From: Haliotis rubra
Lineage: Eukaryota
Length of the DNA: 64,000 nucleotides
Reading direction: 5' to 3'
Assembly: GCF_003918875.1 (NCBI RefSeq)
Contig: NW_025765593.1
Location: 62,001 to 126,000 of the forward strand
The position numbers were made by a program, and so were the translations under genes. Position 1 is the first letter of the stretch. Each line of letters begins with the position of its first letter. A model generated the notes under the pieces. That model made no database searches. It saw only the letters and a list, made by a program, of their open reading frames with translations, and had not been told where the DNA came from. Positions 14,457 to 63,607 of the stretch are shown piece after piece.

Positions 14457-14488
14457 TACGCACGCATAGTATCACCCGTAGGAGAATA

Positions 14489-25837: not shown

Positions 25838-28516
25838 CTGTAAGTTGTATACGCCTCTACGTTTACACTGAAAGGAAAGTAAGACTTGGAGATAGCATTT
25901 TTTCTTCACCCCACACATGCATTCAAACGCATCTTTACTGAGAAATGCCTACAACTATCCATGCATGTGAACAACATCCAATTACTGGGGACTCATTTCC
26001 AGTGTCTTATTTACGAACACGTACGAAAGTGAACACCCCTCTTAGAATTGGAAATATATACCACCGTGAACTTGTCACAGTGGAATACTGTTTCCTCTCT
26101 GTAATTCCTTTTATAGCCCAAATTATGCAAAACCCAGAACCCGTTTAATCCATGGAAGGGTAATTCGGATATTTGTCGTTTGGGGGTACGATTTTGCCTT
26201 CCCGTTTTTATCTCAATTTGTGATTAAGTTTGTCCAAAAAAGTATTAAGATCTACAAAGCTTCTGGGTTGAGTTTACCTGCCCTTTAATATAAACCTTTC
26301 AACAAAAAAGAAACACACAAGCCCAAAAAGTTGAACATATGTATTGTTGTCATTGTCAGCATTAATTCAGTTCACGCCCTGCACATTCAAACTGTGAACT
26401 GTGGCACACCTCTCGTTGTTTTCACGCAAGTGCCCATGTGAAATATATTATACCTAACCCACAATTAGAATAGATCGGAGACTGTTTTCATCAGCTAAAG
26501 CATCACCACCTCACCCCACCCCACCTCACCCCACTCTACTTCATGCACTGAACATCCCGGGCACATACCATAACGGGTTTATTATTCAAAGCCCAACCAC
26601 ACTTAAACCATTTGTGAAGTCAGATGGCATATATTTACGGGATTTTGTACCTTAAATATAATCACTAATCATCATAAGGTATGGTGACATATCTGTTTTC
26701 GAGGAGATTTAGCTCGAGAGTGTCATCTTAAATTTCTGCCAACACACAGTCAATGGTGTACTTCCAGTTTGATACTAAAACCAGTATGTTTCTTATCAGA
26801 TTACAAAATATATCAGCCATAATGCTATGATAGCCTGATAGGTCCAATATCTTTATTAAATGTTCACAAACAGGTAATTGAAAAGACATTACCTGTAATG
26901 TTCTTTTCCAAGAGCCGCCATTTGCAATAAGAATGAGTTTCCCGACGATACAAGGTATTGTCATGTTACACTATTTTGAGGTAATATCAGTTGTCCTTAC
27001 TTTAATGGCGTGTTACGTCTTGTTACCTGAGATGCAAACGGCTTTATATAATCTAAGTCTATGCTTGTGAACATATTGAACATATCTTATGACCACTCAC
27101 TCACGGGCAGTGTTATATTCGATGGGCTTCCTGAACATAAAATAAAAATCTAACTAATCTCCGTCATGTAACATGACTGACCAATTAGAATGACTGACTT
27201 CGAAGAACTGATTTCCCAATTGAAATGATATGTTATGCTATAAGACAATTTGTTATCCTTGGTATTACTTGACATATGTTCTCTCGCCAAAATCTTTAAA
27301 GATACTACACTCTCGGAACAAACAGTGTCATTTCGAGAATACATATTATTGTTACAGAGGACTGTAGAAGTAAACTGATTAACATCTTCACAGCAAAAAA
27401 AAAATGTACAAGGTAACATTCCAGTAATCTAGAGTCAGAAAGTCTGGAAAACAAGTATTGTACATGAAACCCTTGAGCTGATGAAATAATGGACCACTTG
27501 TGTGTAGAAAATAGACACATTTTAGTTACACAAATACTTTCCAAGTAGTGCAGTCTGCGTTAGAGTTAAAAGCAGATATTTTAAATGATACAATACTGGA
27601 AAACATGGAGGAAGGTGCAGCGTGTTTAAGGTGTTTGAGACCACCATTAGCTAAATCTCGTAAGATTTCTATGATTTCAAACCAGATCATACAGACCGTT
27701 CCCATGTCAAGCTTAATAAATTAGTCAATTAGCATGTAGCTCAATATGAAAACTTTGCTCATAACAATCACATAATGAGTAAATATCAATAATAAAGGGC
27801 CTTTTTTCAGCTGACTAAAGATCAGTATATCTCACTGTCAACAGGTGCATGTTTACAGTACACAGAAAAAATCAGATAGCTTAGAGAATATCTTTAATTT
27901 TTGAAAAACGATATTAAGGTTTGATCTTTTTTCAGAGAATACCAGTGGATATATTTTGACCGGCTAAGTGATAAAACAGAAATACTTTCTTACCCATTTG
28001 CTTCCAATCCTGTACTGAGATTCCACGTAGCAAGTGTACAGAACCAGAACACCATACAGCATTGTACAGACACCATCCTTCCTTTCTGTCGATGTTCACT
28101 GAAGGATGACAAGAACGTATCACCGCAGTCCTTCCCTTACATGTGAGAAACACTAATATATATACTGCCGAACACTACAACAGTACAAGGAAGGTGATTA
28201 TTGAACCGTAGTGATCCAACTGGGAGCCTCAGAATTTTGTTGCAATTTGAGTAAATGGACAATTATACTTATTAGGACATCCCTGGGTTATCATATGACT
28301 TTTATCTCTTTCAGACGCTGGGAGTTACTTTCAAGCAGAGGGAGCCACGGTCAGTCAAAAGGTGGTAGACTGGATACTTTGTTACCATGTCTAGAGCTCT
28401 GCAATTGGTGCATAACCAATAACTGATCGGTTCTGTCAAGCTAAACTGTAACATGCATCAGAGCGGCCTTGCACCATAAGCCGGGGTAAGTCAGGACAAA
28501 TACTCTCAAAAAGAGA

Positions 28517-37260: not shown

Positions 37261-37538
37261 TCAGTTCAAGCTTACTGTTTGTGTTGACAAGGTCGACAGA
37301 CCACATGTATCAATAGCGGTTAGAGTAACATAAATCTCATCAAATCTCCGATCTCGTGAATTTAAAGTCAGGGCGATTTCATCATTCTCTGTTAACAGCT
37401 TGTCTACAATATCGGCGCCTCCGAGAACTGTTCCAACGTGAACTTCATACTTCAGGTCGTCCCAGGGAGAAGCAAACATATTCCGCCAGGTGACGGTCAG
37501 TCGGTCGCCAGTTTTGACCACAGACAAACGGCCAGAAG
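37261..37538 (-). CDS. Terminal coding exon of copy B (last FN3-like repeat, no transmembrane helix)
   Basis: Acceptor ccccacag|CT TCT GGC; LTVTWRNMF..LKYEVHVGTVLGGADIV..VTLTAIDTCGLS..SLN*. Confidence 0.8.
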
Positions 37539-40500
37539 CTGTGGGGAGATGTTAAACACGTGTATATTGTCATTAACCATTAACTTGACCGTAGACGGCA
37601 TGACCCACTAACCGGCACATCTATGTGGCATTTGCAACTGACAGAACTGAATTACTTTTATGAAAACTATCCATAATTTTAGATAGTGTGACTTATTTTA
37701 TCACGGTTTTTGAGCAACATAATGTAAGATATCTGGTATAGACATGCATTCGTTTGGCACGTCTAAGCTGTTTTACAGCATACAACACACCTATTATCGC
37801 TGGAGGAAGCCCATGCACCGTGACGTTCAACACAGTTGTCTCTCCGTGTGTTCTCATCTCGTCAATAGGAAAACTGAGGGCATGATACGTCGCTCCATTC
37901 TTCAGTGTTACACCCACTAATGTAGCCAAGGTGTACTCCAGATGGACGGGGACAACACTCTGCTGTGTCAGCGTATCTCCCTCAATACCAATCTGAAACA
38001 CAAGCTACTAATGTAAGTACTGGTTTACTGTAGCTAGTACCCCAAGTACTGGTTTACTATAGCAACTACTCCAAGTACTGGTTTACTATAGCAACTACTC
38101 CAAGTACTGGTTTACTACAGCAACTACTCCAAGTACTGGTTTACTGTAGCAACTACTCCAAGTACTGTTTTACTATAGTAACCACTCAAAGTACTGGTTT
38201 ACTGTACCTAGTGATCCATGTATTGTTCTGCTGTAGCTAGTACTCCAAGTACTGTTTTACTATAGTAACTACTCCAAGTACTGGTTTACTATAGCAACTA
38301 CTCCCAGTACTGGTTTACTATAGCAACTACTCCAAGTACTGTTTTACTATAGCCAGTGCTCCAAGTACTGGTTTACTGTAGCTAGTACTCCAAGTATTGG
38401 TTTACTATAGCAACTACTCCAAGTACTGATTTACTGTAGCAACTACTCCAAGTACTGTTTTACTGTAATAACTACTCCAAGTACTGTTTTACTATAGTCA
38501 GTGCTCCAAGTACTGGTTTACTGTAGCTAGTACTCCAGGCACTGGTTTACTATAGCAACTACTCCAAGTACTGTTTTACTATAGCCAGTGCTCCAAGTAC
38601 TGGTTTACTGTAGGTAGTACTCCAAGTATTGGTTTACTATAGCAACTACTCCAAGAACTGGTTTACTATAGCCAGTGCTCCAAGTACTGGTTTACTGTAG
38701 CTAGTACTCCAAGTACTGGTTTACTATAGCAACTACTCCAAGTACTGGTTTACTATAGCAACTACTCTAAGTACTGGTTTACTATAGCAACTACTCCAAG
38801 TACTGTTTTACTATAGCCAGTGCTCCAAGTACTGGTTTACTGTAGCTAGTACTCCAAGTATTGGTTTACTATAGCAACTACTCCAAGAACTGGTTTACTA
38901 TAGCCAGTGCTCCAAGTACTGGTTTACTGTAGCTAGTACTCCAAGTATTGGTTTACTATAGCAACTACTCCAAGTACTGGTTTACTATAGCAACTACTCT
39001 AAGTACTGGTTTACTATAGCAACTACTCCAAGTACTGTTTTACTATAGCAAGTGCTCCAAGTACTGGTTTACTGTAGCTAGTACTCCAAGTATTGGTTTA
39101 CTATAGCAACTACTCCAAGAACTGGTTTACTATAGCCAGTGCTCCAAGTACTGGTTTACTGTAGCTAGTACTCCAAGTACTGGTTTACTATAGCAACTAC
39201 TCCAAGTACTGGTTTACTATAGCAACTACTCCAAGTACTGGTTTACTATAGCAACTACTCCAAGTACTGTTTTACTATAGCCAGTGCTCCAAGTACTGGT
39301 TTACTGTAGCTAGTACTCCAAGTATTGGTTTACTATAGCAACTACTCCAAGAACTGGTTTACTATAGCCAGTGCTCCAAGTACTGGTTTACTATAGCAAC
39401 TACTCCAAGTACTGGTTTACTATAGCAACTACTGCAAGTACTGTTTTACTATAGCCAGTGCTCCAACTATTGGTTTACTGTAGCTAGTACTCCAAGTACT
39501 GGTTTGCTGTAGCAACTACTCCAAGTACTGTTTTACTATAGCAACTACTCCAAGTACTGGTTTACTATAGCAACTACCCCAAGTACTGGTTTACCATAGC
39601 TAGTGCTCCAAGTACTGGTTTACGGTAGCAACTACTCCAATTACTGGTTTACTATAGCAACTACTCCAATTACTGTTTTACTATAGCAACTACTCCAAGA
39701 ACTGGTTTACTATAGCAACTACTCCAATTACTGGTTTACTATAGCAACTACTCCAAGAACTGGTTTACTATAGCAACTACTCCAATTACTGTTTTACTAT
39801 AGCAACTACTCCAAGTACTGTTTTACTATAGCAACTACTCCAATTACTGGTTTACTATAGCAACTACCCCAAGTACTGGTTTACCATAGCAACTACTCCA
39901 AGTACTGTTTTACTATAGCAACTACTCCAAGTACTGGTTTACTGTAGCAACTACTCCAATTACTGGTTTACTATAGCAACTACTCCAAGTACTGGTTTAC
40001 TATAGCAACTACTCCAAGTACTGTTTTACTATAGCAACAACTCCAAGTACAGGTTTACAGTAGCAACTACTCTAAGTACTGGTTTACTATAGCAACTACT
40101 CCAAGTACTGGTTTACAGTAGCAGCTACTCTAAGTACTGGTTTACTATAGCTAGTGCTCCAAGTACGGTTTTACTATAGCAACTACCCTCAAGATTATGA
40201 TATTTATCAACTACAAACGTATACAGCTGCAATGATTGATGCTTTACGTTCCGTGTTTTCTGATTTTCTGAAGATATTGAGTTTACCACTGTTTTGAAGT
40301 GTCGGCTGGTTTTGTCCCATCGGAGTCGGACTTTCTCCTGACTCTGGTGACACATATCCCTCTCACTGTACACCGACTGACTTTCTCTCAGGACACTGAA
40401 GCCAGGAACTGATGTCTGGTTCCTTGTATTGACCACTTCAACTCCATCCGACGTCATGGCCGCCGCCAGCCCCGCCTTGTTGAAGCATCGAACTGTGCTG

Positions 40501-43500
40501 TAGACTGTCACGGGCGATGTGTGGAACTTAGAGGCGATGTCATGTTGGGCTGTGGACTGACCCGGGGGGACCCTCTCAAACTGCTTCATGTCACTGCTGC
40601 CTCGTGTCCTCCCTTGTCATCGAACAAGATACATAGCGTGCATACAAGAAATGGTTAAGATGTTTGTATATATACTCATGGAAAGAAATACGGGAACATA
40701 TGAACGTACAAGTGTTCCTTTATTCTCTTGCAGGTTTCTTCACAAGGTATATATTGCACTGTGGGGAAATTCTGGAACTAAATAAAGGAACACCTGTGCT
40801 TGCATGTGTTCCCTTATTCCTTTCCATGAGTATATATGAATACATAAGGACTATATTTAAATACTGTGACGCCAAACTCGCTATACGTGGAACTGTTTCC
40901 ATCTAAATTATATATAAAACTGTTTATGTCCATTTACTATTGTAGTGAAGATGCTTCATCCATTAGAATTACATATTCCAGGTTTGGACTCAAGATGAGA
41001 TCAGTACACATATTTCACATGCATTTTTATCATTTGTGGCTTGCAGATGTCAGGAATTCCCAGAAATATATTACATATTGTACAGCAATATTGATCAATT
41101 TTAGGATTGCCTGCATTTGTGTCTGACATAAGATGTTTACTCTTTGAAAGTAACCACGCAGTACACATGTCGTTGCCATGGATCTTTCATTCAAGCCTCT
41201 TTATGATAAACAACACAGAAAACGCAAGCTTTTAAAATTGTTAGCGATGAAGTTATACCACGTACCAATAGCCCAGTCGCAGTGTTCTACACCTGATTCT
41301 TCATCTCTGACTTGCCAGTAGACACTCACCACACCTGATGTCTGATAGTCTTCATCTCGTCCTGGAACAAACGGAAACACTCAATCTGTGTCAATGAAGC
41401 AACTAGATTACTATGTTACGAAGAACTCTTTCAATTATTGGATGTAATATTAATCCATCAATAGAAGTGGACCTGCAACTAAATTATCAATGTCAATTTT
41501 ACCATCCAGACCATCACTGATGAGGTCGAACTGTGGTGCAGTCATGTCTACTGTGATGGCGTCAGCGTACGTCACAGCTGTCAGCCCAGCAACATTCGTC
41601 GCCATGACAGTAATGTAAACAGTGGTCCCATGGAGCAGCTGCACATTAGACAGTGTTCCCTGTGTGGCTCGACCTAGGTCCGTGTAGCCCTGGACATGTG
41701 TACCACCTGGAGTTGTGCCTGGAACACAAGGACCCTCTGGTATAATAAGCAATAACTTACACATGGACTAATATATAACATTATATCGGTAACGGCACAC
41801 TTAAGCAATGGTGTGTTGATGAGCTCTCGAAAGGTTAGAAAGTACTGTGTATATGAGTGTGTGTGTGTGTGTGTTGTTGTACGCTGATTTTAGCAATAAT
41901 CTAACAATATCACGACGGAGGACAATAGAAATGTACTTTGCACATTGTACCCACATGGTGAACCAAAGCAGGGAATCTACTTAGCTATAGTTTCAGATCT
42001 GGTCCTATGTCATATATTATGCTTTCCTCTACGGCCCCTAGTAAAAATCCTTAAAACTAAAAAGGAATATACAAGTTAATATCTTGTTCTTGGAATCATA
42101 ATATCGGACATTTGCCATTAACTCTATCACAGCGGTGCATATAATAGTCACAAACAGTGTATGGACGTAATGACAGCAAAACTAGTTACCAATCGCCCAT
42201 TTGTACTGTGTAATTGGAGATTGTAGGTCCTCAAAGTGCCAGGAAGCATGTAGAGATGACCAGTGAGACAGGAACACAGAATGGACCACCAGATGCTCCT
42301 CATTGTCAACACTGTCCTGACCAGCAACATAGTCCACGGTCTGGACACTCACATGGTCCAGTACAAACTCCATCATCCTTGACGATGACGTTATCGTCAG
42401 CACTACACTGGTACCAACGGCTGTGAACCTGTATGTGTGCTTGTTCCAGAGGACGACTGAGTGATCTCCGACACTGCAGGTGCCTCTACAGAGATAAGGG
42501 TCCAGGGTAAAGCTGAAGACTTCACTTCCTATTGTAACTATTGCATCAACTGATCTGTGGGTGTTGGAAACAGTCTCTGGATATCCAGCATGCAGAGTCA
42601 CCTTGTACTGCCTCCCAACCTCAAGTCCTGAGATCATTTGTTGGATGCTTCCACTTACGGACACAAACATATGTCCATCTTTAGCTAAAGGTGAATCCGG
42701 CGCCTGAACCTTGATACAGGACGCTGTGTCAGTTTCCCATGATGTTGGTATGACGAGGTTGCAGCTTGATGTACTACCTGTAATATCGTCTACCTCGAAA
42801 GATGGGTTCTTCACCAGATTGTCTCCAAGATATGCTACATTCTGACGTTCAGGTGGAGATGCATCAACAACGACTCCATCAGATACAACAACATCAGAGG
42901 TGTAACCAACAGCATCCACCGCATACACCTTGCTCCATATTCTTGTACCTGAACACAAGATAATGTGATAGGTATGTACATACACATCATCCTATATCTA
43001 ACATAAGTGGCACTAACATAAGGTATACTCACTGACCATTAACGATTGGAGATAAGAGTGACCTCCTAGAATATGTGTGTAGTCCTGTAGCCAACCAGTC
43101 CATCACACTGCAATCTGATGTGTCGTTGATTGTCCCCACACACCAGAAATACTTGGCTATGGTGGAGTCTGTGTCCGAGAAGCCGTACCAGGAGGCAGAG
43201 ACTTCGGATGTTGAACTCTGGTAGTCCACGTCATGGATATCTGCAGACATTTTCAACATAAATAATAAATATGTTTAAAAAGTTTACTGTATATATCATA
43301 CCTACGTTAATACCATATCAAGAGAGAAGAAAAGATTGACAATATTACGAACCAAGTCCGTCCATTATTCTGCCTGCCACTGGAGGAATGACGTCCACTT
43401 GTACTCCATCAGAATAGGCCCACCTGACCAGACCAGCCTTGTTGTAAGCCAGGACACTGCAGTAGTAGACGGTGTTTGGACGTAACCTCAGACCTGTCGC

Positions 43501-46500
43501 TGTATGGCTGGTGAAGGTCAGGTCCCCTGATTCATGAATACTGTGACCTGCATCATATAGTATGTAAAACTAGGACTATTGCCTTTCAAGAATGGAGTCC
43601 TCCAAATTCAACAGTTATACGATTGTCTGTTGAATTAGTGAATTGCAATTAGACGAAATTTGTCAAAGTCAGTATTCAAAATACCTCCTTGCACAGTGCT
43701 GATAAAGACCCTGTATTTGAGGATGCCGCTCTGACCCTGAAGGAACTTTCCACTCCACTGGACAAACAGAGTTTCGTTCTGTGTCTGAAAGTCTGTATCT
43801 TTGGTGTCAGTTGGGTGTGCAAGCTCTTTCACCTGTGGTAACACAGCAGCGCTAAGTCACTCCATCTAAACACATGCACCTTCTACAACACTGAAACCAA
43901 CGGCAGCTCTGTAAATACATGTGAACAATATAATAGCAGATACTTACAGTTTGGCCCAACTTGACTGTTACTGTGGGTGGTGCTGTTTGGATAAGGACGC
44001 CATCCGATTTGAAGATACTGTAGGTTTTGTTATACCACGCTCTCACAAAGAAGGAATATTTTACTCCAGATGTCAGAGACTTGCCTGCAAATCATCATGA
44101 CACGTAAATCAGCTGTTTACGTATATTGAGATTGTTGAAGTGCTATGTCGATGAGTGATTGGTTAATACCAATTGATTAAAGCTTCCATATAAGCATTTT
44201 GTGTCGTGTGAAGTTGTACACGAGTATGATTCATTCTCACCTGCAGGTAAGGAGACAACAGCAGATGTTTGTAGACCTGCATCAAACCAAACCCTGTCGG
44301 CCGTGGCGTGAAACACTCCCCTTGGCTCATCACTCTCTTCTCCACCTATACTGTATTCATATCTGTTCCAAAGGACAAATATTACAGACAACAAATAACA
44401 AATAGCACGTGCCAGGATGCATCTGCGAACTCATGTACATATTACAAAGTATGCATAGTGTGTATAGAAAAGACTGCTTACCGTGAAACAGGTGATCCCC
44501 CTGACGAGTCAGTCCAAGTGGCAGCCATGACAGTGTTGAACAGACTGACGTCGATGTCATTAGAACCACCCTGAGACATGAGGTCCACCACGTCTTTGAT
44601 TGTGATGTTTTTATCTGCTCCACCAAGATGCAAAGGGGTTGAAGTTTTCGTAAGAAAACGGAAATGAGGGTTTCTAGCAGCTAAACCCTTCCTGCTCTGT
44701 TAACCTGTTGTGAGTTTATGTACTGGACATTTAGCCATTAATGAAAGACACGTGTAAGAGATCTATAGCTACGAAAATGACTGAAATGTGATATTAGGTC
44801 CTAATCTTTCTGTTTGGTTTCTCTTTTCTCAACAAACCTGTTTTGTCTTGTGTACATGTTTTACTGGCAGAACAGGTACCGCCCTGTACAGCACAGACAC
44901 AATGGCCCTCACAGTTGTAGGCCTGGCACCTCCTCACCAGCCACAGTGTAGAGTTAGCCTCCAGGACCAGTTCAGCGTGGTAGGCATCACTCTGTAGGCC
45001 AACCTAGAAGTAGCATTGGGTACAATCATGCTTTGAGTATAGGATATCTTCAGTTCACAAAGGTTTAGGACAGCGTCAAAGTACCTACCCCATTCACACC
45101 CCAGATAGCTACAAACACAGATCCTGATGACGGCAGGGTACGAGTGTGTACTGTGAAACGTTGCAGGACTCCTTCATCACCCTTGTTCACACCCGAGTCA
45201 CTGTGGAAGACCTTCTCATGTAGTGTACCCTGAAATAAACATATATTTGTGTATGTACAAGGTGGATCTTCCCTCCTTGTACATTTACACCATGTAACAT
45301 TGTATGTATAAACAACTCGTATTTCTATATATATGGGTATTGCGATCGTTGTCTCAAAGAAATTTCTCACTGTATTGTAATCTGTTCCGAATTCGTGAGA
45401 TCCTATTGTTACAAGGTAATGGTCCACCCCTGAATGTAGGTCAGAGAAGCCAAGCCACGCCAGGTTCAGACTGGTCCTGGTCCAAGTCATCAAGCCAGTC
45501 TGATGTCGTGGAAGTTTTACTGCATGGTCAGTTTCTATGGCGAACGTACCTGCAGATTAAATATTACATCATCATCATTACTATTATCGACGTCATCGTC
45601 CTGAGATTTCTCAGCAGAGTAAGATTATCATTCATTGATCTGTTTATTTGGACCACAACAAAATCATACCTGTATTTGGTTTCGAGCTGTCAACCAAAAT
45701 GTTGTTTGTGTTTGCCGATACACAGAGACCCGCCATATTGCACGCGGTAACCTTCACCTTGTATTTACTTCCATCATGCAAATCAAGGTTCACAAAAATG
45801 TATTCTCGGAGTAAACCAGGCACCTGGAATACAACATACATGGATGAAAAGATGAACGCTCAGTATTCCTGTGTATTGACAATATTTCAGCTTGACATTA
45901 CAAGACCTGATTATCCTTTGTTAAGCTATATGACGGCGGTCTATACATAAACGATTCTGGACTAGATAATATAGTGATTTACATCATGAGCATCAATCTG
46001 CGCAATTGGGATACGGTGACGTGCACCATCCAAGTTAGTCCACCCGATCCCGTTAGTCGCATACCATTAGTACCGTTACAATAAATATGGGTTGTTGGAG
46101 ACCGATTCTAACTGAATGCCATATATACTGCGTTTTATATATAAGACAAACCTTTACCTCAAGATTAGAACTATCTATCTCTCCAAGCTGGTGAGATGAT
46201 AAGGAGAGGTATTGGCGTTCTATCGAGGACTCGGCGTCTTGGAACTCCCACTGTAGACCTATAGCTGTCCGACTTACTGTAGTGTTAGGAACAAGGGACA
46301 TTAACCTTCTCACTGTCGGAGGTGAAACCACAATGGGAATGCTGTCATCCACCAGTACCCCATTAGACATGGCCTCTGAATAAAGCCCTAAACATGATGC
46401 AGTATTTGTCACGATTCTGTCTACCTGCTACACCTACAATTCGACTGTTGTCGTCAACCGTCTGCAACATACCTGCTTTGTTGAATGCCCGGATAGTGTT

Positions 46501-52500: not shown

Positions 52501-55500
52501 TTCTGAAATTAGACAGAGGCGCCACTTGATTGTACATATACAATCCTGTAAACAACAGAACAAATTCATAGTTTGCAAGTGTTTCAATCAACATCAGTTT
52601 ACCAACCGTTTTCCAATGCAGGCTCAAACCAGTGAAAGAATGTAAGGTTGCACTTCCAACATAGACATGCGCCTGGATATCTGTTGTAAATGGCTGAGAC
52701 CCAATTCCAACCGTGTACGTAATGGCAGTTATTCCATTGTCAAATCCATACCATCTCGCTGTTAATGTTCGTGTTGATATTTGGTAGTCTGTGTCATCAG
52801 TACGCTGAAAGTATACAGACATATTTATGTCTTCCATGGTCATCACACATGCTACAGGGACGATGTGTTTGTCGAGTATATAAAACAAACATTAATAATG
52901 TTGGGCCATTTTCGAAATTAGCTTTGACTGACCTGACCTGGTTAGAACACCACGAACGCATAGTAAGTGAGTGAGTGAGTATAGTTTTACGCCACACTTA
53001 GCAACATCCCAGCTATATGGCGGCGGTCTGTAAATAATCGAGTCTGGACCAGACAATACAACATACATGGATGAATAGATGAACGTTCAGTATTTCTGTG
53101 TACTGACACTATTTCGTGGTCACTCTTCAGCTTGAGTGAGTGAGTTTTGTTTTACGCCGCACTCTGCAATATTCCAGCTATATGGCGGCGGTCTGTAAAT
53201 AATCGAGTCCCGACCAGACAATCCGGTGATCAACAGCATGAGCATCGATCTACGCAATTGGGAATCGATGACATGTGTCAACCAAGACAGCGAGCCTGAC
53301 CACCCGATCCCGTTTGTCGCCTTTTATGACAAGCATGGGTTACTGAAGGCTCATTCTAACCCGGACCTTCACGGGTACGAACGCATAGTATCACCCATAG
53401 GAGAATATTGTAGTACATGAGTTCATGAGGTAATGAATGATCTACAAACATATAGATATAAATAATGCAAACAGAAAATAATGGAAAGAAAACATTTGTT
53501 GTATAAATAGCAGAAGATTCAAAAGCAAAATGTATCCAGTTGAACATGGCAAGGGTTGTACTTATGGGATACAAGAACTAAAATAATGATCTCAAAATAT
53601 TCAAAGGCTATATCCCTTTCTTTACACGTCAGCATAACACTATCTTTATTACCAGAAACTCACGAAACAATAACAGGTTGTATAAGCAATGAAGTGGCCT
53701 ACTAATCACGACATTTATGACAATACGTCTCGAAGACTATAGTTACTGACTTAATACGTGATGACAGAACTATCCACTATCGATAAAAAGAAAGCTGAAG
53801 AGTGTTTGAAATATTATTAACGTGATCGAATCATGCATATCATGTAAAATACAGATTATATAAATCACTAGCATAAAATTGTGTGAACCTGTTTGTTTCG
53901 TGATATGATATTCAACCACACATTCGCGTTCGTTTGCCGAATACGTGATAAATAACATTAAAGATACACATACCGGTATTGTGAACAAGGATTCTTCTCC
54001 AGCTGGAATAACGTCTTCTACTACACCACGTAACGGCGGCATGACGGTATGGACGTAGGGTTCAGACACTGCCACTGTAGACAGTCCAACTATGTTGGTG
54101 ACTCTGACTGACACAAAGTAGGTGTGGCTGTGATGGAGGTCCCAGTGGACGTCTGTGAGGGCGACAGCTGTACACGTGGGTGGCGACGTCAGTGTACAAC
54201 CTCCTCCTGACTGCAGCGTCGTGAAGGGGATTATTGTCGACTTGCCGTCCTTAGTTCCTGACGAACATAATGTAAGTGCAATGGCAGTTTCATAGGCGTT
54301 TGAAATAAGATGAAGGATATTAGAGCGATAACGACTGCACATACCTACTGCAGCTTCATATTTTAGATACCCAGTGTCTGTGAATGCTGTCTCTGGCCAA
54401 CGTGCAATCAAATAGTTGTGTCTCAGCGTCACTGTCACTGATCCAGTAAATGCAGGGTATCGTGTATACACGGTGACAGGTCCAACAACCTTTAATGAAA
54501 ACAGTTACATCTGGTCATTTCGTTCAAATACGTGTGTTTACGCAAAGAGTCATCAGTCCAAAGAAATTGATGCATATATTCTTCATAAACATACAACATG
54601 AAACATAAGTGATTCTCTTGTGTGCCCTTACTCTGACAGTTGAGATGCCAGCTTTGTTGATGGCCTTGATGGCGATGTAGAACTGTTGTCCCTCACTGAG
54701 ACGAGGATGGTAGCCCTGATATTGAGGATGATGATGAGTGGATGTGTAGGGCAGGATATCTGGAGCTGCTTCACCAGAAGGATCTGACATCAGCCCCAGC
54801 TCGTAGTCATAGATACCACTCTCAGAGTCACTGCCAGTCCAGTTTACGAAGAGCTGGGAAACAATCAAACACTTTACTGAAAGCAGTGTACAGTTTATAA
54901 ATAGACGACACATGATCAAAAACTGAACTGAGATACGGATAAAAACGTTGTTACTGTACACAAATAATCAAATACTGATATGATAAGCTGGAGAAAACAT
55001 TGTTAAGTTTCACAAATAATGAGTATTAAAATATACACAAAGGGTGTGCATGCTGGTACTTCATTGCGATCTTCATTACATAAGGTACTCACATGGTGTT
55101 CCCTGTAGACATAGAGTAAGTTGGTGAAGCTGACAGGTAATGCTAGTAAAGATTCACACTCAGGATTGATCCCAAGTTGCATCCCACTTCCATTGTTGTA
55201 TCGATGTATTGGAAACAGGGACATTCTCTGGTCATCTACTGGCGTGGCCTTGGAACTGGAGACAGTTACATGATGTATCTGTGTGATGGCTAACTGTATA
55301 CTGTATACTGGAGTATTGTAAACGATATTAATGTTGCTTGTGAGTTACTGATTACTTATAATGAGGAAACTGTTTAACGATAAATAGGTTTAGAGTTATC
55401 CTCGTTACCAAATGACTATTTAATTACAGATAGGTGGCATCGAATTTGATGTTGAATTTGATGAGACAAACTTGAACTGGTTGTGGGCATGAGATCAAAG

Positions 55501-58500
55501 TCGGCTAATCATGACGTCGACGATCACATCGTGAAATTGCGTTCATATCGGGGGAAAGTAGGATTCTTTTATAAGAACATGTGCATAGCCTTGAGTTCAG
55601 ATGTAAAATCAAAACTCAAATCATTCAGGATAAATTGTCGTTTCAAGAATTAGAAAGACGACAATGTTCCTTCTTCCAAATAAGACAATGTAAATTACCG
55701 ATGACAACAGCCCCGAACATAAATCCAGAATAATGTCAGAAAATATTCAATCAGACACAATGCTAATTTTTAATATGGTCCAACAGTCACCTGTTGCATA
55801 TCCAGTTGTTATCCTCCTGGTATCAGCATGATGTTTATTGGTAATTCTTCAGGCAAAATTACAATTACGTTTTTAAACCTCCAACCGGATTTCATCTATC
55901 GTGGTATTATGTGAAAATGAGAAATAAAATTAAGTACTTTCAATGATACTGGAAGTATGACCATCACACACGACAGTCACGTATCACAGAATTAGAAGAA
56001 AAATACAAAAAAACCGCATACACTTTTCACTAAACTGTTGTACCTGCAACTGCCATCTGGATTGACCACCAGGGTACGTCTCCTGTGGGCGTCGATGAAC
56101 CACACAACTTTATCTGATGACTTGACCAGCCCCTCCATCACCCTAGAGTCTCTCACTGCCACCTCACTGACACTGGGTGGTGTTGTGTCTACAGTCACTC
56201 CGTCAGAACACACGGGGTCAGATGCTCCCAGTGCTCGGTTGAAGGCCACCACTGTCACGTGAAACTTGCCGACAGAGGGCGCTGTCCAGGAGGCGGATGT
56301 GGAATAGGTTTCCGTGACCTACATGTGATGAGTGAATGATCCGAAATATTTAGACAGATTTGTGTGATTTTTACAAGAGAAAAACAACAACATCATTTCA
56401 TCTTATCTCCAGTACAGAAACACACACACACACGCACGCATGCACGCCCCACCCATGCACGCACACATGGTACTTCCATATTATCTACATTCACCACATT
56501 TTCTAATTCATCGATCACATGATTGTCTGGTTTGTTTTCAGGTAGTCGTCGCATGGCAGGGGTACTGCGAAAATACTTCCAGTTTTAGGCAACTGTTGTG
56601 AATGGAGTATGATACTTGTAGGGCAGGAGATGCTTAGCCTTTTGGCATGAACATGGTGTCATCACTGGTTTTCAGTGATCCATTCACATGACTCACGCAG
56701 CCAGTTTTCCCCTTTACAGCAAACAGAATTGGTTTCAAGGATAGTCAAAACTGTGTATTCTTTAACGCTGACGTTCTATATTTACCTCAAATGAAGATTT
56801 ATTAACTCCAAATTCATTTGCTGAGAGACATTGAGGCCCAAATTTATATTGGTAAAATTTGACTCCGCTCTCTTTGTCAAAAAATCCGTCCCATTGGCTG
56901 GAGAGTTGGAGATGCTGCTGGTAGTCCACTTCCGGGTTCCCTATCTGACCATCCTTAACAACGCCAGGATGAGGGGGGCTTGTATCAACTGTAACCTGGA
57001 CAAGGTCGTGGAACAGCATGTTAGGAAATAGATCATGTGTATATTGATCAAAAGGAAATCATATATACTTGTATTGAACGCATAGAAGCGATTTCCATCA
57101 ATCATACGAAAGTTTCACTTACTTTAAACTCCATCTTTGTTTTAAGCTTGGCACGGTTTGTCACATTGACCTCTAGGTAGTAGTCAGAGTCGTGTGATCC
57201 CCTGCTTTTGTTGCTGAATATTCCACCATGTGGGAGACTACTGTCTACTACGATGGGCTTTACTTGGAAGTGACGATGGTAGCAAACTTTGGCTGGCGTG
57301 CAGTAACAGTTAGCTCCCCTTGGGGCATCAGTGTAGGCTCTCTTGCAGTTAGCAATACTCTGTGTTATTTACATACCAGATATTTTTAACAATACAGTTA
57401 GCTTTTGAGACATATGGTCATTAATATTATTGATGGTGTCTGACCAACCTCCATTGTCAAATATGTGATAAAGTGTGTTTAACAAGAGAAGTAATGGAGT
57501 AAAGCGCATGTTCCATTACCGCAAGAAGTACAACTATGGCATACATAGGTGTGTACTGAAAACTACTTACACTTGTGTCCCCTTGAGCCGTGATATGCTG
57601 AACTCCATGCACGATATCTAAACCCCGGTATTTATCTACAATACGCCATGACACCGTCTCCAAGCCACTGTGCTCATCGTATGCAATCCACTCCATTCTG
57701 AAATTGCATAACAAAGTTTGACAATTCATCACATCAGACCGTTGTCTCGGAGATTTTACCGTGATCAAGGTAGTCCACTGTTTTGAGTAGTACACTGGTA
57801 AAGTTGGACGAAGGGCAAAATACAGGTCATGTCCCCGATATAAGTCTCAAATGTTTGTGAAAGGGAATCTAAAAACGAACCAAAAATAATATTATTTCTG
57901 TATAATTATCTATTAATGAACACCATAAGTAAACAAAAGACGCGTCATTTCGGAAGTACTTAGGTAAAGTTGGACGAAGGGAAAAATACATCTCATGACA
58001 TGTTTACTTAGTCAAAATATTTATTTATCCAAATTCTTAAAGTGAATCTAGAAATGAACTAACAATAATGCTGCTGAATTATAATAATTAATTAATTAGC
58101 GCCATATTAAAACAAGGACTTGCGTCATTTCGGAAAACTCCTCAGCTCCATGTACACTGATGTTGAGTCGGTCTCCCCTGGTCAGCCAAAGGTTCTCTAT
58201 GACTGGGGGTGATGTGTCGATGTGGACTGTCACATGTTCTTCAAGGAATTCGCGTCTGATGTCATAGGCTCGTATCCAGAAGCGTACAGTGTCCCCGTCC
58301 ACTAGTGAGGGTGTTATGGTCTGTGATTGACTCAGAGCTTGACTGGTGAACAGGCTATCAGCTGGTGGACTGGTGATGGACGATCCTCCTTGGTGGTCAA
58401 CTTTGTATGACGACAAGAATTGTGTTACACCTGTTGAACATACATGACCATACTCAGTTATCAGAAGAGGGAGATGCTTGGGATTTCAGCGGTAAAAGTT

Positions 58501-61500
58501 AACAAACAAAACGATTATGAATGCTTCTATATGGCCATTATTAGTTGATTCGTTGAATAAGTGTGTATACACCAATGATGGATTGTTGTTATCTTGTGAT
58601 AAATGCGTCATTATATATGAGATTCCAGAACATGTGTACGTTCTATATAAACAAGCCTGCAAATTGTGCCAACCTTGAACATTGTTGATGGCAGCCACAC
58701 TTCTGTCACCCTCCTTATCATCATAGCCCGAGCTGATGTAACCCAGAGAAGCTACGCCAAGGAGCCACTTGTTGTTGAGATGGACTGTGTTGATGTATCT
58801 GTTGGTCCAGTCTACTGTCACTGATGATGATGTAGATTGCCACTTTGATGTTGCTGATGATGCTGTTGTCACACGGAGAGATGTATTTGCTCGTGTTGTT
58901 ACAGTTGAAGTACCATCATATATCAATATTCTTCTTGTACTTCTGTGATTACCTCCCTTGTCATAGGCAGTTAGGACGACAGAATACACGCCCGCCGTAG
59001 TCAGTGTGAAGCTGTTGGACGTCTGAAACATGTACATATGGAAACAATACATACATCTGTAAACTGAACACGTGACCACACACCGTGACAGATCGATTGT
59101 CAATGGAATTAATGTCCTTGTCAGTTCAAGTGTCATGTTCATGTCAGTTCAGATTTGTTTAGCTGGATCAAGTACTTATTTTTACTACTTATTTGTGAAG
59201 GTAACACACACGTGCGTAAGCACATGTATACACACACACACGCGCGCGCATGCATTCACATAGCGCTTTCTATATTCACGAGACTGCAAATAATCAACCA
59301 TGATTTGTATTCATGTAAATATTGGAACCACAATTCCTCACATTTGAGCTTGTCAACGTTGTAGTCTTAACACGACGTTTATCCCTGAGTACACCCCCCA
59401 ACAGCGTGGAGTTCATACACGTCCTTGACAAAGTAGTCGACTCCTGCATCAGTATCTGACCAGCCACTCCAGCGGAAGTTCACTGTGGGCTGAAACAAGT
59501 AACAGATTCATTCTTCCTGTATACAATTAACATCGGGTGTGAAAGTGAAATATAACTATGGTCACATACTTACAGTCTTGATAACATCGGGAACAGTCAG
59601 CATGCTGCCAACACAGGCAGTGGTACCAGTACAGTGATAGGGATCCACCAGGTCTATGGACATAGTAAAGGTGTGGGTCTGTGTGGCACCGTTGTAGTAG
59701 TAGGTCACTAGTGTGTTACTCTCCTTGTCCCGAACCTCCACATACCCTCCATTACTTGTTGAATAAGTGAATTCCATACTGAAAACAATCATGTCAAAAT
59801 ATATACAGAATTCTACAAATGGTGAAAATTATATCAATTGAGAAACAGTTGCACTGTAGTTCATCAACGTTCTGTTGACTAACTTACACTGTACACAGTA
59901 GTGGCCACTTAACTTGTCAACATAGCGAGTGTACATATGATCATATTGATAGTAGACTTATATACACAATTATTCGTTTCATTATTCAACATTCAAAATA
60001 ACGCACGGTGTCTGTATCGTAGCTAGCCCCTCCCCACCACTCACACATCTCTGTGTTGGAAGGGCAGAGGTAGTACAGACGTCCCTTGTGGGTTTCCTTC
60101 ACATGTGTACAGGTCTGTGTCCGGGCTGGTTCGGCTGGCTCCTCCACAGTTATAGACCTTAGTGGAGACAACACCTGCACCTTGGTACAACAACACAGTC
60201 AGCTGAGTGAATAATGTTTTCAGATAATGATGAAACAACAAAACTCGAGTTGATCAGTTAGGTGATTCAGGTTATGTTCTCGCCGACACATCATTTTATC
60301 GCTGTTTGATGATGATACATAAACGCATGCTCGTGATATAGTCGGAATTGAACAGTGGACTTGAATGTGGAAAGGGTACTTGATTATGAATTCACCACCG
60401 TATATACCGTTGTAAAGCCAGATAAACTGTACAATATAATACCTGACACGTTAGGTATACGTTCCAACTTCGAACGTATGCAGCAAAATGTCACATTATT
60501 CATACTGTGCCCTCTGATATTCGACATACCTCTCTTTAGTTTGAATGTAGAAGAACCACTGACAATTCCCACACGGAAGTCTTCAATGAAGGCATGTCTG
60601 GACGGAGGTACCATTTTGTATTCTCCCGTAAACTTGTAGTACATTCTGGATGGAGAGTTGATGTTTGACCAGCTGGTGGACTGAGATGGACCACTGTTGA
60701 TGTCGGGAGGTGCCTCTGCCGTGTCACCGTTGCTGGTGGTCAGTCTAAGGCGGTTGAAGTGTATTGTGGGCTTCGTTGTTACTGTAACATACTTGTATTG
60801 TATAAACAAAAAACGAATGTACAAAATATACGAACAAATACGATAAACGACAGTACAAAAGATTTACAATTTCGTTGACATTTCCAGTTCAAACGTTTCT
60901 ATTCATACGGTGTCCATTTCGCTAAAGGGAACTACTTAAATATGGAAAATCAACGCCAGTGAAAGGCCAATGCCGATCATCCATAGAAACAGATTCAAAG
61001 AATCCTGAAGCAACATATAGCGCTGAAAAGTATATAACGAATGAATCACCGAAAGTCAATGATGGCACAAGGTCTTCGAGAAAAAAAGGTAAGCACGCCT
61101 GGCGCTACTGGCAGCACCTGTCATTTACACCTTGCAAACGAAAAAGAAGCTTTAAGTGCTTGTTGTTTGCTACTTGTATTCCCAGGAAGCGTCAACTCAC
61201 TTGTCTGACAATGTTTCCCTGTGAAGCCACTGGAGCAGGCACAGTTACTGGCGTACTCGTTCCTGCAGGTTCCGGGATAACACCGGGTGCTGTCACTCCG
61301 CCAGGAACACGCCTCTGTAGACACAAATGTGGGATCTGGCTTCACAGCATGGTCAGTTAAGTATCTAAATCTGTATTGTTCGTTGACGGCAAGGCATATT
61401 CTTACTTCGACAGGGGCGGTGGGGTAGCCTAGTGGTTAAAGCGTTGGCTCGTCACACCGAAGACCCGGGTTCGAATCCCCACATGGGTGCAATGTTTAAA

Positions 61501-63607
61501 GCCCATTTCTGGTGTCCCCCGCCGTGATGTTGCTAGAATATTGCTAATAGCGGCGTAAAACCAAACTCAGTCAGTCTTACTTCGACATGATCATTTGTTG
61601 TAATAAGAAACAATATACGTAAAACCGATGTCCACTTCCTGGCTTTTGACTAAAAACGATTTTGTTTTATTTGACATATCCAGAGATAGAGTCGAAGGAT
61701 ACCATACAAATAGATATCAATAAAACCCATTTCAGTAATAAAAGACCAGGGAATAGAAGAAATAATATGTTTAGATTGAAAATTCTGAGGGTTTGCTTGT
61801 ATGTTGTTTTGTTCATAACTCGATGAACTGTGATAATATCAGTAGGAACCTAACAACATGCATTTGTGTAAGTGGGGGATATATTGTTGAGTCGTTATTC
61901 ACCAATTGCAACTCACGTATGCAAGATCTGTTATCAGAAGACGCCACATACGCCATGTGTCCTGCCTGGCCCAGCACGACCCCATCACAGCGACTACACA
62001 CCTGGTTGCTGCTGCTGGTGCATGTCTCCAGGTCACAGTTACTGATGGCGCTGCACACTGGCAATGGTAATATGTGACAACGTGAATTTTGAGCTGGGAA
62101 CGCAGATAACGCAGAAATATATTATGGTCACAAAAGCTTTTACAAGTGAGCCAGCTGTGGTCAACACCTCATTTCCAGTCATGCAAGCTTAATTTTAGGA
62201 AAAAAGATACAAATGGCGTTTACGATTTTAGTACAAACCACGAGTATGGCGCTGATAGCACAAGAAACAAAATCGGGGATTCAAACCCGCATGTGTAGGT
62301 TTATAGCATACCAAAGGGAAGTAACGCCGCGACACGAATGGCGGCACATACACGTCCCCGACATGAATGAATCGACTGAGCCTTAATGCACGTACTTCTG
62401 CAGCGTTCATTGCTGGGGTAAAAGCCTTCATTACAGTTGGCACAGATCCTAGGGGAGGTACAGCTGCCCCCACTCTTGTACTGTGTCCTGCCGTTACTGT
62501 AGACGATGTGAGATGTCCTGTATTCGATGTTGCAAGCAGCGGACTGTATCTGATTGTCACATACAGCTGCAATGTTTAGATGGTGTTTCATTGTTACAGT
62601 ATGTGACTGAAACCATCAATGTCAAATCATGAGAAATCCGAGGTATCTTGTATTATTTGCCTAGATGGGATTAAAAGAAAGAACGCATGTTTGCATGCAT
62701 TAGTGAGCCTTACAAAAACATGTTTGTGTATGACAATCAACAGTTCTACCAGAATACATTCCACGACCCGTCCAACCTTATGTTATACATATCAAGGTAT
62801 ACAGATGATCAGATCATTATGACAACAATTTTAGTGAGACCAGACGTTGCTCAGTCCAAGTAGCACAATTCACTTACGATGTGGGCAGCCTTTGCTATCT
62901 GTTGATCTGTACCCTGATTTGCATCTGTAATTTGTGACCGGCCTCTTCCTGGTAGTAGAAAACGTGTTCTCCTACGATGCCTTTAATATTGTCAACACAG
63001 GAATGTGCAACTTCGTAACAATATTTATATCATGTATCCTTTAATATTCGGACATAGTGCGGGCATCGATTACGATTGGTCACTACAGATCAGAAAGAGG
63101 ATTTCCGTTTGTCATATAGGTCAACGGTGATGCCCTGACCTTCAGAAAATGTGATCAGAACATAACTAAATCATCGTTCAAAAGCCATTAACAGGGAGAC
63201 TGGTCAAATCAGGAAGATGTATGTATTCAAAAAAGAACATTATGAATGATAACCAATGTTTTTAAGTACAGATGTTTTTACCTGTATCTTGTGCACCGGC
63301 CCCACTTCCAAAACCCACACTTCGTTGTGTAACCTGATGACCTGTAAGTTGTATACGCCTCTACGTTTACACTGAAAGGAAAGTAAGACTTGGAGATTGC
63401 ATTTTTTCTTCACCCCACACATGCATTCAAACGAGTTGCATCTTTACTGAGAAATGCCTACAACTATCCATGCATGTGAACAACATCCAATGACTGGGGA
63501 CTCATTTCTAGTGTCTTATTTACGAACAAGTACGAAAGTGAACACCCCTCTTAGAATTGGAAATATATACCACCGTGAACTTGTCACAGTGGAATACTGT
63601 TTCCTCT
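37261..63607 (-). CDS. Copy B: giant multi-exon gene (~53 exons, ~3,360 aa) for an uncharacterised, probably secreted EMI-like/EGF-like + ~20 FN3/Ig-like repeat + CBM-like protein; two 1-bp homopolymer frameshifts as assembled
   Basis: Hand-built exons with GT(GC)-AG boundaries and matching phases, 5'->3': 63571-63607 (tentative), 63282-63341, 62878-62948, 62396-62566, 61917-62057, 61201-61314, 60530-60781, 60045-60180, 59574-59778, 59342-59489, 58674-59022, 58124-58430, 57571-57697, 57123-57359, 56786-56995, 56044-56318, 55093-55255, 54632-54853, 54345-54489, 53974-54257, 52607-52804, 52364-52502, 51882-51916, 51230-51357, 50634-50866, 50372-50539, 50092-50263, 49719-49964, 49404-49624, 49151-49256, 48908-49024, 48497-48629, 47631-47805, 47095-47371, 46824-47013, 46473-46687, 46158-46387, 45670-45823, 45371-45549, 45089-45229, 44838-45003, 44482-44614, 44241-44362, 43948-44084, 43685-43832, 43353-43547, 43037-43240, 42190-42948, 41503-41718, 41266-41361, 40287-40612, 37791-37992, 37261-37538 (TGA). 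Recurrent motif e.g. VVDTTPPSTGHVYD..DKDY..WEGFDDPHS..YKVKVGT; WRGFSDPESGLDYYEWRVGT. Confidence 0.85.
38000..40187. repeat. Same 29-bp minisatellite expanded to ~75 units, with a 232-bp (8-unit) higher-order repeat
   Basis: Variant CCAAGAACTGG recurs at 38651, 38883, 39115 and 39347. Confidence 0.95.
40673..40832. mobile_element. 160-bp MITE of the same family; copy B only at this position
   Basis: Termini TACTCATGGAAAG...CTTTCCATGAGTA; empty site gtatatatatg at ~906-916 in copy A. Confidence 0.85.
42190..42948 (-). CDS. Largest exon (759 nt), copy B: CBM/galactose-binding-like module
   Basis: NLVKNPSFE...WNKHTYRFTA...LDHVSV; same exon boundaries as copy A. Confidence 0.65.
52966..53375 (-). 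mobile_element. SINE family 2, equivalent copy in B, carrying an internal 165-bp insert
   Basis: Perfect TSD acgaacgcatagta; extra segment 53058-53222. Confidence 0.85.
61201..63341 (-). CDS. Copy B N-terminal exons: EMI-like segment and EGF-like units
   Basis: Homologous exons, e.g. SSGYTTKCGFWKWGRCTRYR|KRPVTNYRCKSGYRSTDSKGCPH and CACSSGFTGKHCQT. Confidence 0.7.
61413..61574 (+). mobile_element. tRNA-derived SINE (equivalent insertion in copy B)
   Basis: Perfect TSD tcttacttcgaca on both sides. Confidence 0.85.

What the first reader, a model, noticed from the sequence alone, without database searches (positions are those of the whole stretch)
37261..63607. Tandemly arrayed giant (~3,360 aa) modular protein of unknown function: EMI/EGF-like head, ~20 FN3/Ig-like repeats and a carbohydrate-binding-like module
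Seen: the fragmentary ORFs join into one 53-exon gene with consistent intron phases, present twice in tandem. The repeat is D[TS]xPPxxGxVxDG-DxD[YF]Q-WxGFxDxESGIxxYxxxxGT-LxxGxxYxxxVxAxNxAGL-SDG. There is no catalytic motif and no C-terminal membrane anchor. Inference: a long rod-like extracellular protein with a variable N-terminal head and a glycan-binding module, fitting a multi-copy recognition, adhesion or mucus-scaffold system (innate immunity, or gamete/self recognition). The acidic DG..DxD linkers may bind Ca2+ and rigidify the rod. I cannot assign it to a characterised gene family.
Basis: partly seen in the sequence, partly recalled or inferred. Interest (0 to 1): 0.85.

Follow-up and report, generated by a model that had tools for sequence, protein, structure and literature searches.

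The report
Giant secreted FN3-rod gene, duplicated
This stretch of blacklip abalone DNA holds two tandem copies of a real, transcribed 53-exon gene for a ~370 kDa secreted rod-shaped protein that belongs to a widespread but entirely unstudied family of marine-invertebrate proteins, so it is a sound re-annotation, not a new kind of system.

Summary
The window is Haliotis rubra contig QXJH01001630.1. On the minus strand, 63371-37264 carries exons 2-53 of one gene. These encode 3,361 aa; exon 1, the signal peptide, lies beyond the window's right end. Fifteen introns are confirmed by RNA contigs.

A second copy, 95-97% identical, occupies 28076-1. RefSeq annotates only fragments (LOC124271767, 1,928 aa; LOC124271771, 1,494 aa).

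Architecture:
- a cysteine-rich/EGF head and a beta-sandwich domain;
- about 20 divergent FN3 domains (structure match Z 10.5);
- a CBM4/16/22- and DUF642-like jelly-roll module;
- no membrane anchor.
An EMI domain is not supported.

Full-length relatives of 3,100-3,500 aa, all named "uncharacterized", occur in many copies in molluscs, annelids, nemerteans, brachiopods, echinoderms, hemichordates and amphioxus, and, shorter, in cnidarians. No vertebrate was among the hits. Some paralogues add SRCR, C-type lectin, TSP1, VWA, trefoil or PLAT modules at the N-terminus.

The two copies differ with dN/dS 0.36, so they have been under purifying selection. Copy B has two +1 homopolymer frameshifts, possibly assembly errors. 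Copy A has a stop codon and clustered indels.

Function is inferred only: most likely an extracellular glycan-binding scaffold. This is a new member of a known kind.

The parts
37264..63371 (-). Copy B, exons 2-53 (52 exons, 3,361 aa). The stop codon TGA is at 37261-37263. Exon 1 (signal peptide) lies beyond the window's right end.
   Evidence: Spliced alignment to orthologues P0173/P0174 and to RefSeq P0001, which is reproduced 1928/1928. 15 introns are confirmed by RNA contigs.
61201..63371 (-). Exons 2-6: cysteine-rich head (model residues 1-195). It consists of a beta-hairpin, small disulphide-rich modules of C..C..GFY type and one EGF-like module.
   Evidence: AF2 model of the orthologous head has pLDDT 89. 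EGF_2 scores 19.5 bits against a cut-off of 22.1. A PDB profile hit to the TGF-alpha EGF has E 0.0075. The EphB2 ectodomain is the top Foldseek hit. There is no EMI hit.
59574..60781 (-). Exons 7-9: a large beta-sandwich domain (about residues 196-390) conserved across the family.
   Evidence: High-confidence AF2 strands. VIA matches for model residues 198-365 are to FN3/Ig-like and adhesin repeat domains at Z about 9.
43037..59489 (-). Exons 10-47: the main array of divergent FN3 domains. Most are encoded by two exons each. Non-repeat inserts lie at about aa 473-657 and in a Cys-rich piece at about aa 2390-2425.
   Evidence: Self-HMM finds 18 strong and about 3 partial repeats over the whole protein. 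Pfam fn3 scores 53 bits in orthologue P0173. The FN3 fold matches at Z 10.5.
42190..42948 (-). Exon 48 (759 nt): the end of one FN3, a CBM-like beta-jelly-roll module (about aa 2765-2957) and the start of the next FN3.
   Evidence: AF2 pLDDT 82. Foldseek matches CBM4-2, CBM22, CBM16 and Stig cyclases at E about 1e-6 and prob 1.0. DUF642 E 0.017. The NPSFE and DDV motifs are conserved in 30 homologues.
37264..41718 (-). Exons 49-53: the last three FN3-like domains and one unassigned domain, then the C-terminus ...TQTVSLN with no hydrophobic tail.
38015..40186 (.). 29-bp minisatellite (about 75 copies) that fills intron 51 of copy B.
   Evidence: Tandem Repeats Finder; self-BLAST.
59393..59399 (-). 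Frame break 1 of copy B: a run of six G where copy A has GGGGA (one base fewer). It lies in exon 10.
   Evidence: A/B alignment and three-frame translation.
51247..51252 (-). Frame break 2 of copy B: a run of five A where copy A has four. It lies 18 nt before the donor of exon 24.
   Evidence: A/B alignment.
1..28076 (-). Copy A, exons 1-51. Exon 1 (28076-27994) encodes MVSVQCCMVFWFCTLATWNLSTGLEANG. The last two exons lie off the left edge. Copy A carries TAA at 10826-10824 and frame-shifting indels in exons 14-15 (18911-18338).
   Evidence: Spliced alignment; signal-exon scan; lesions; last exons found in L002.

Best explanation
Shown:
- 63371-37264 (minus strand) is one transcribed, spliced gene of Haliotis rubra. 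A diverged tandem copy lies at 28076-1.
- The gene encodes a signal-peptide-bearing protein of about 3,390 aa (about 370 kDa) with no anchor.
- The protein is built from a conserved cysteine-rich/EGF head, a beta-sandwich domain, about 20 divergent FN3 domains and one CBM4/16/22- and DUF642-like jelly roll near the C-terminus.
- It belongs to an old, multi-copy family of 3,100-3,500 aa with no known function, found in cnidarians, lophotrochozoans, echinoderms, hemichordates and amphioxus.
- RefSeq splits both copies into fragments.

Inferred:
- The protein is secreted as a long rod of roughly 25 beta-sandwich domains.
- The rod serves as a scaffold of an extracellular or apical matrix, or of mucus.
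- The jelly-roll module holds a polysaccharide.
- The disulphide-rich head, or the extra lectin, SRCR, TSP1, VWA or trefoil modules that paralogues place in front of it, binds a second partner or links rods together.
- The tandem duplication adds dosage or a slightly different head.
For: Identity and gene structure:
- The window is 100% identical to H. rubra QXJH01001630.1.
- The P0001 exon map is reproduced exactly.
- The full model is colinear with orthologues of 3,389 and 3,406 aa, with no stop.
- RNA contigs carry GT..AG joints at 15 model introns. Contigs with 0-2 mismatches lie where the copies differ by 9-10%, so copy B itself is transcribed.

Secretion:
- Copy A and the orthologues have a signal peptide.
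- There is no transmembrane segment.

Domains:
- FN3 fold and repeat count.
- CBM-like fold and conserved N..FE and DDV motifs.

Family and selection:
- The family is spread across phyla, with adjacent paralogues in several genomes.
- N-terminal add-ons are all extracellular binding modules.
- dN/dS between the copies is 0.36.
Against: - No tissue, protein-level or ligand data exist. Function rests on domain content alone.
- Continuity of the 5' half (63371-50634) with the RNA-supported 3' half rests on homology, not on a transcript.
- Copy B has two frameshifts in the assembly, and copy A has a stop codon and several indels. One or both copies may therefore be non-functional in this individual.
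- CBM-like folds also occur in proteins that bind no sugar, such as the Stig cyclases.
Confidence: 0.6

Rival explanations
1. It is a soluble recognition molecule of innate immunity or of gamete or self recognition. The variable N-terminal end and the lectin-like module would bind foreign or partner surfaces, and gene copies would diversify under positive selection.
For: - The family is multi-copy and often tandem.
- Paralogues carry SRCR, C-type lectin, TSP1 and VWA modules at the N-terminus.
- Head exons 2-6 show dN/dS 0.94 against 0.26-0.36 in the rod. Exons 4-5 diverge more than their flanking introns (7.7% against 4.3%, Fisher p 0.02).
Against: - dN/dS does not exceed 1 and rests on only 32 changes.
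- The core head is well conserved between species (81% to H. asinina) and between phyla.
- There are no expression or challenge data.
- The same add-on modules are common in ordinary matrix proteins.
Confidence: 0.2
2. Both copies in this window are decaying pseudogenes of a family whose working members lie elsewhere in the genome.
For: - Copy B has two +1 frameshifts.
- Copy A has a TAA stop, where copy B has TTA, and eight small indels in exons 14-15.
- Exons and introns diverge at similar rates between the copies.
- At least eight other loci of the family exist in H. rubra.
Against: - dN/dS is 0.36 over 3,085 codons.
- All 52 exons keep their splice sites.
- Copy B is transcribed and correctly spliced.
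- Both breaks in copy B are single extra bases in homopolymers, as expected from consensus errors of a long-read assembly. This is my own knowledge and was not tested here.
Confidence: 0.15
3. The public annotation is right: the region holds several separate shorter genes (748+, 326, 410 and 1,928 aa) and not one giant gene.
For: Gene calls on the public contig are split in this way. No transcript spanning the splits was examined here.
Against: - The pieces are colinear, in order and without gaps, with single proteins of 3,100-3,500 aa in more than ten phyla or classes.
- P0001 starts at an internal Met inside exon 25 and skips conserved residues.
- The sum of the fragments is 3,412 aa.
Confidence: 0.05

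Closest known systems
Predicted orthologues: H. asinina P0173 (3,389 aa), H. rufescens LOC124141844 (P0174, 3,406 aa), and the wider family (for example Branchiostoma LOC118405866, Acanthaster LOC110977889, Crassostrea LOC105348718)
   Same: Same length, same order of head, beta-sandwich, FN3 array and jelly roll. Identity is 75-81% within Haliotis and 30-37% across phyla. They are often tandem.
   Different: None in kind. All are computer-predicted and unnamed. The window's own genes are annotated only as fragments.
FN3-array matrix proteins such as tenascins and fibronectin
   Same: Secreted, with EGF-type modules near the N-terminus followed by a long run of FN3 domains that forms a rod.
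   Different: There is no heptad assembly domain, no fibrinogen globe and no FN1/FN2 modules. The FN3 variant has a W.GF.D.ESGI motif and D.TPP..G.V.DG linkers, plus a CBM-like jelly roll. No sequence relationship exists beyond the FN3 fold.
CBM4/CBM16/CBM22 carbohydrate-binding modules and DUF642 (PF04862)
   Same: Beta-jelly-roll fold. The N..FE motif in the first strand and the DDV motif near the end are conserved. Foldseek E is about 1e-6.
   Different: Pfam DUF642 scores below its cut-off for this protein (15.3 against 27 bits). The module sits in an animal protein, and no ligand is known.
Eph receptor ectodomain
   Same: A cysteine-rich region with an EGF-like module followed by FN3 domains. 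EphB2 is the top Foldseek hit of the head model (E 1.3e-6).
   Different: There is no ephrin-binding domain, membrane span or kinase. The global TM-score is only 0.2.
Giant bacterial surface adhesins built of Ig/FN3-like repeats (Pfam Big_13, Big_3_3)
   Same: Long rods of about 100-aa beta-sandwich repeats whose ends read VD.T.P. Weak Pfam hits fall exactly on that C-terminal end. This is a working analogy for a rod that carries binding modules.
   Different: This is an animal gene with 52 introns. It has no secretion signal or anchor of bacterial type, and Ca2+ binding is not shown.

Membership tests
Unnamed giant FN3-rod family (P0173/P0174/P0053 type) | Full-length colinear similarity with the same domain order and a length of about 3,100-3,500 aa | tested here: met
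   The spliced alignment gives 3,361 aa colinear with P0173 and P0174. The head aligns to residues 46-466 of amphioxus P0053. The jelly roll sits at the same relative place in 3,100-3,500-aa proteins.
Fibronectin type III domain (PF00041) | Seven-strand beta-sandwich of FN3 topology | tested here: met
   VIA-align gives Z 10.5, rmsd 2.2 A over 92 residues to LAR FN5. Many other FN3 domains match at Z 9-10.
Fibronectin type III domain (PF00041) | Pfam score above the gathering cut-off | tested here: met
   Orthologue P0173 scores 53.4 bits against a cut-off of 25. For the window's own product P0001 only faint precomputed hits exist.
DUF642 / CBM4-9-16-22-like jelly roll | Beta-jelly-roll fold of the galactose-binding-domain-like class | tested here: met
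   AF2 pLDDT 82. Foldseek prob 1.0, E 1e-6 to 1e-5, with target-normalised TM-scores of 0.53-0.62 to CBM4-2, CBM22 and CBM16.
DUF642 / CBM4-9-16-22-like jelly roll | Pfam DUF642 score above the gathering cut-off (27 bits) | tested here: not met
   15.3 bits for the window's exon and 26.5 bits for amphioxus P0053. The family is listed among precomputed hits for several relatives.
DUF642 / CBM4-9-16-22-like jelly roll | Binding of a carbohydrate | not testable with these tools
   Needs a recombinant module and glycan arrays.
EGF-like domain | Six-cysteine EGF pattern recognised by a profile | tested here: inconclusive
   EGF_2 scores 19.5 bits against a cut-off of 22.1. The family profile hits the TGF-alpha EGF at E 0.0075.
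EMI domain (PF07546) | Profile match to EMI | tested here: not met
   No EMI hit at E<=1 for residues 1-230 of orthologue P0173. Only a loose resemblance of the cysteine and aromatic pattern remains.
Membrane-anchored adhesion receptor | Transmembrane segment or hydrophobic C-terminal tail | tested here: not met
   The maximum 19-residue Kyte-Doolittle mean is 1.32, and the C-terminus is polar.

The most novel reading that the evidence does not exclude
The family is an unrecognised, ancient class of extracellular recognition rods of marine invertebrates. A constant FN3 chassis with a built-in glycan-binding jelly roll would present an exchangeable N-terminal sensor (the core Cys-rich head, or SRCR, C-type lectin, TSP1, VWA or trefoil modules). 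Tandem arrays would diversify the sensor end for immune or self/non-self discrimination.
Probability: 0.12. Interest if true: 0.7.

Novelty: new member of a known kind. Interest (0 to 1): 0.38.

Why it matters
The practical gain is a corrected gene model. Four or more RefSeq fragments per copy join into one 53-exon gene.

The same 3,100-3,500-aa architecture recurs in many copies from cnidarians to amphioxus, none has a name or a studied function, and no vertebrate was among the hits.

A protein this large, this conserved and this often duplicated is probably a major component of some extracellular structure of marine invertebrates, such as mucus, an apical matrix or an adhesive or shell-forming layer. 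Naming the family and finding its tissue and its ligand would fill a gap in comparative matrix biology.

It does not by itself overturn anything.

Tried and rejected
- Pfam on raw exon ORFs gave nothing above cut-off.
- PDB sequence-profile searches gave only weak hits: a CBM4-2 xylanase module at E 0.69 and EGF modules.
- The ESM Atlas search by features gave no usable hit for the head.
- The Atlas search by shape gave only 'hypothetical protein' clusters.
- Three paper searches found nothing relevant: two on 12 locus identifiers in all, one on DUF642 with FN3.
- H. asinina P0005 was a poor guide for the 5' half and produced spurious micro-exons. It was replaced by the closer orthologues P0173 and P0174.
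- A candidate in-window first exon at 63871 (MLTMTTIPMF...) was rejected. The orthologue-like signal exon of copy A lies 2.1 kb upstream of its exon 2, which puts exon 1 of copy B beyond 64000.
- A third tandem copy was sought in the 10 kb downstream of copy A and not found.
- EMI identity was rejected.
- The whole-model Foldseek search of the 472-residue head was dominated by tandem FN3 hits. The first 60 residues therefore remain essentially untested.
Full report
WHAT THE WINDOW IS. Window 27261-60816 is 100% identical to Haliotis rubra assembly GCA_003918875.1, contig QXJH01001630.1. An earlier scan note had already suggested an abalone. Window coordinate x corresponds to record coordinate x + 62000.

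THE OBSERVATION.
- Duplication. Self-BLAST shows a tandem duplication. Copy A spans 1-26484, copy B about 40000-64000, and long blocks are 95-97% identical.
- RefSeq models. RefSeq protein P0001 (XP_046562884.1, LOC124271767, 1,928 aa) belongs to copy B. P0152 (LOC124271771, 1,494 aa) belongs to copy A. My spliced aligner reproduces P0001 exactly (1928/1928) as 29 exons from 50816 to 37264.
- RNA evidence. Runs X1-X3 behave as RNA when laid on 41401-47400. They show 13 joints whose skipped parts begin CT and end AC on the plus strand, which is GT..AG on the minus strand. Loose ends mark two more introns. The DNA run X5 crosses the introns. All 15 introns match the model, and the spliced stretch is open. 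Some RNA contigs have 0-2 mismatches over exons 46-47, where the copies differ by 9-10%. Copy B itself is therefore transcribed.

THE FULL GENE.
- Fragmented annotation. Upstream of P0001 the public contig carries three more gene calls of 748+, 326 and 410 aa. With P0001's 1,928 aa these sum to 3,412 aa.
- Orthologues. Closer orthologues exist as single proteins: H. asinina P0173 (3,389 aa) and H. rufescens P0174 (3,406 aa).
- Model. Spliced alignment of either orthologue to 37000-64000 gives the same chain. After refinement it has 52 exons, 63371..37264. All acceptors are AG and all donors GT, except a consensus GC donor (CAG|GCAAGT) after exon 25. The chain encodes 3,361 aa with no stop and ends in TGA at 37261-37263.
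- Exon 1. The orthologues start with a signal peptide. Copy A has the matching exon at 28076-27994 (MVSVQCCMVFWFCTLATWNLSTGLEANG), 2.1 kb upstream of its exon 2. Exon 1 of copy B must therefore lie beyond 64000.
- Verdict on the count. The stated upper limit 63607 is not an exon edge.

FRAME BREAKS.
- Copy B has one extra G in a G-run (59393-59399, exon 10) and one extra A in an A-run (about 51251, exon 24) relative to copy A and the orthologues.
- Copy A has TAA at 10826-10824 where copy B has TTA. It also has eight small indels in exons 14-15. Its last two exons lie left of the window.
- Against decay: Nei-Gojobori dN/dS between the copies is 0.36 over 3,085 codons (dS 0.068, dN 0.025). Every splice site of copy B is intact.
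- I read the two homopolymer insertions of copy B as probable assembly errors, but I could not test this. Copy A may really be damaged.

ARCHITECTURE.
- Repeats. A self-trained HMM finds 18 strong and about 3 partial copies of an ~90-aa unit. Its consensus is DTDYQVSTTSLSAQWEGFSDEESGIEKYEVAIGT...GTKYYVTVRATNKAGLSTVAVSD, followed by G..VD.TPP..G.V.DG linkers.
- Head model. An AF2 model of the orthologous N-terminal 472 residues, built from 31 sequences, has pLDDT 89. Its last domain, the first repeat, superposes on FN3 domains at Z 10.5, rmsd 2.2 A over 92 residues. Residues 198-365 form a larger beta-sandwich.
- Cysteine-rich part of the head. It has an EGF-like module supported only weakly. 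The whole head resembles the Eph-receptor ectodomain layout. No EMI profile match was found.
- Jelly roll. Exon 48 encodes a module whose AF2 model, from 30 sequences, has pLDDT 82. It matches CBM4-2, CBM22 and CBM16 modules and CBM-like cyclases at E about 1e-6. The motifs NPSFE and DDV are conserved. Pfam DUF642 scores below its cut-off here and just below it in amphioxus.
- Bulk properties. The mature protein is 369 kDa with pI 5.8, 72 Cys and 22 N-glycosylation sequons. It has no hydrophobic segment.

THE FAMILY.
- Distribution. Exhaustive and word-based searches find relatives, most of them 3,100-3,500 aa, with the jelly roll at the same relative position. They occur in gastropods, bivalves, an annelid, a nemertean, a brachiopod, sea stars, a brittle star, crinoids, hemichordates and amphioxus. 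Shorter relatives occur in Nematostella and a coral. Many genomes hold several copies per species, and adjacent loci occur in several genomes. All are 'uncharacterized' or carry automatic names.
- Absences. No vertebrate, arthropod or nematode protein appeared among the hits. This is not proof of absence.
- Copy number. H. rubra has at least eight further loci.
- Conserved core head. It aligns from molluscs to amphioxus.
- N-terminal add-ons. Some paralogues add TSP1+PLAT, SRCR x3, discoidin-like+trefoil, C-type lectin, C-type lectin+VWA, dermatopontin or PAN modules in front of the head.
- Literature. Paper searches on 12 locus identifiers and on DUF642 with FN3 found no description of the family.

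DIVERGENCE BETWEEN THE COPIES.
- Most exons and introns differ by 1-4%. Some blocks are identical. The 3' part (exons 46-50) differs by 6-10% in exons and up to 17% in introns. This mosaic suggests gene conversion or a composite origin.
- Head exons 2-6 show dN/dS 0.94 (25 non-synonymous against 7 synonymous changes). The rod shows 0.26-0.36.
- Exons 4-5 diverge more than their flanking introns (Fisher p 0.02). This agrees in direction with scan note s1-327975 but does not show positive selection.

HOW IT MOST LIKELY WORKS (inferred). A signal peptide and the absence of any anchor point to a secreted rod of about 25 beta-sandwich domains. The jelly roll probably binds a polysaccharide. The disulphide-rich head, or the added lectin-type modules of paralogues, binds another partner or cross-links rods. 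I favour a scaffold of an extracellular or apical matrix or of mucus (0.6 for the whole statement, of which the identity part is near certain). An immune or self-recognition role is possible (0.2). Ca2+-stiffened linkers are plausible by analogy with bacterial repeat adhesins, but I did not test this.

VERDICT. It is a new, better-assembled member of a database-known but unstudied family of FN3-array secreted proteins. Interest is moderate.

Noticed in passing
window 38015-40186 and 35-427: A 29-bp minisatellite (unit AAGTACTGGTTTACTATAGCAACTACTCC) fills intron 51. Copy B has about 75 units. In copy A it spans only about 390 bp within the window (35-427).
   Followed up: partly
window 10824-10826 and 18338-18911: Copy A carries a TAA stop where copy B has TTA. 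It also has eight small indels clustered in exons 14-15. Copy A may be decaying, or that stretch of the assembly may be poorly polished.
   Followed up: partly
window 40287-63371 against 521-25867: Divergence between the two copies is a mosaic. Some exon-intron blocks are identical (around 54345-54489 and 45670-45823). Introns near 41500-43350 differ by up to 17%. This suggests gene conversion or a composite duplication.
   Followed up: partly
window 50545-50816: RefSeq model P0001 starts at an internal Met in exon 25. It then uses a donor at 50742 that skips conserved residues (VCSKPIYSDGVTVIAHPPTPG...). The orthologue-supported exon ends at 50634 with a GC-AG intron.
   Followed up: yes
window 28977-29580: The 9-kb spacer between the copies holds overlapping minus-strand ORFs that look like remnants of a Tc1/mariner-type transposase. 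This is judged by eye only.
   Followed up: no
window 14214-14488, 32439-32656, 53133-53407: A short interspersed repeat is shared between introns of both copies and, inverted, the spacer (78-95% identity). It overlaps scan note s1-328052.
   Followed up: no
proteins P0238-P0252 and P0287-P0291 (metagenome sources): Metagenomic proteins of about 1,650-5,100 aa (most about 2,000) share the same FN3-like repeat type at E 1e-25 to 1e-50. Some also have PQQ-type beta-propeller domains. They look prokaryotic, so the repeat type may be shared with microbial surface proteins.
   Followed up: no
model residue 643 (window about 58250): A single RGD (WLTRGDRLNISV) is conserved in both copies and in two of three abalone relatives compared (KGD in the third). 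This may be chance.
   Followed up: no
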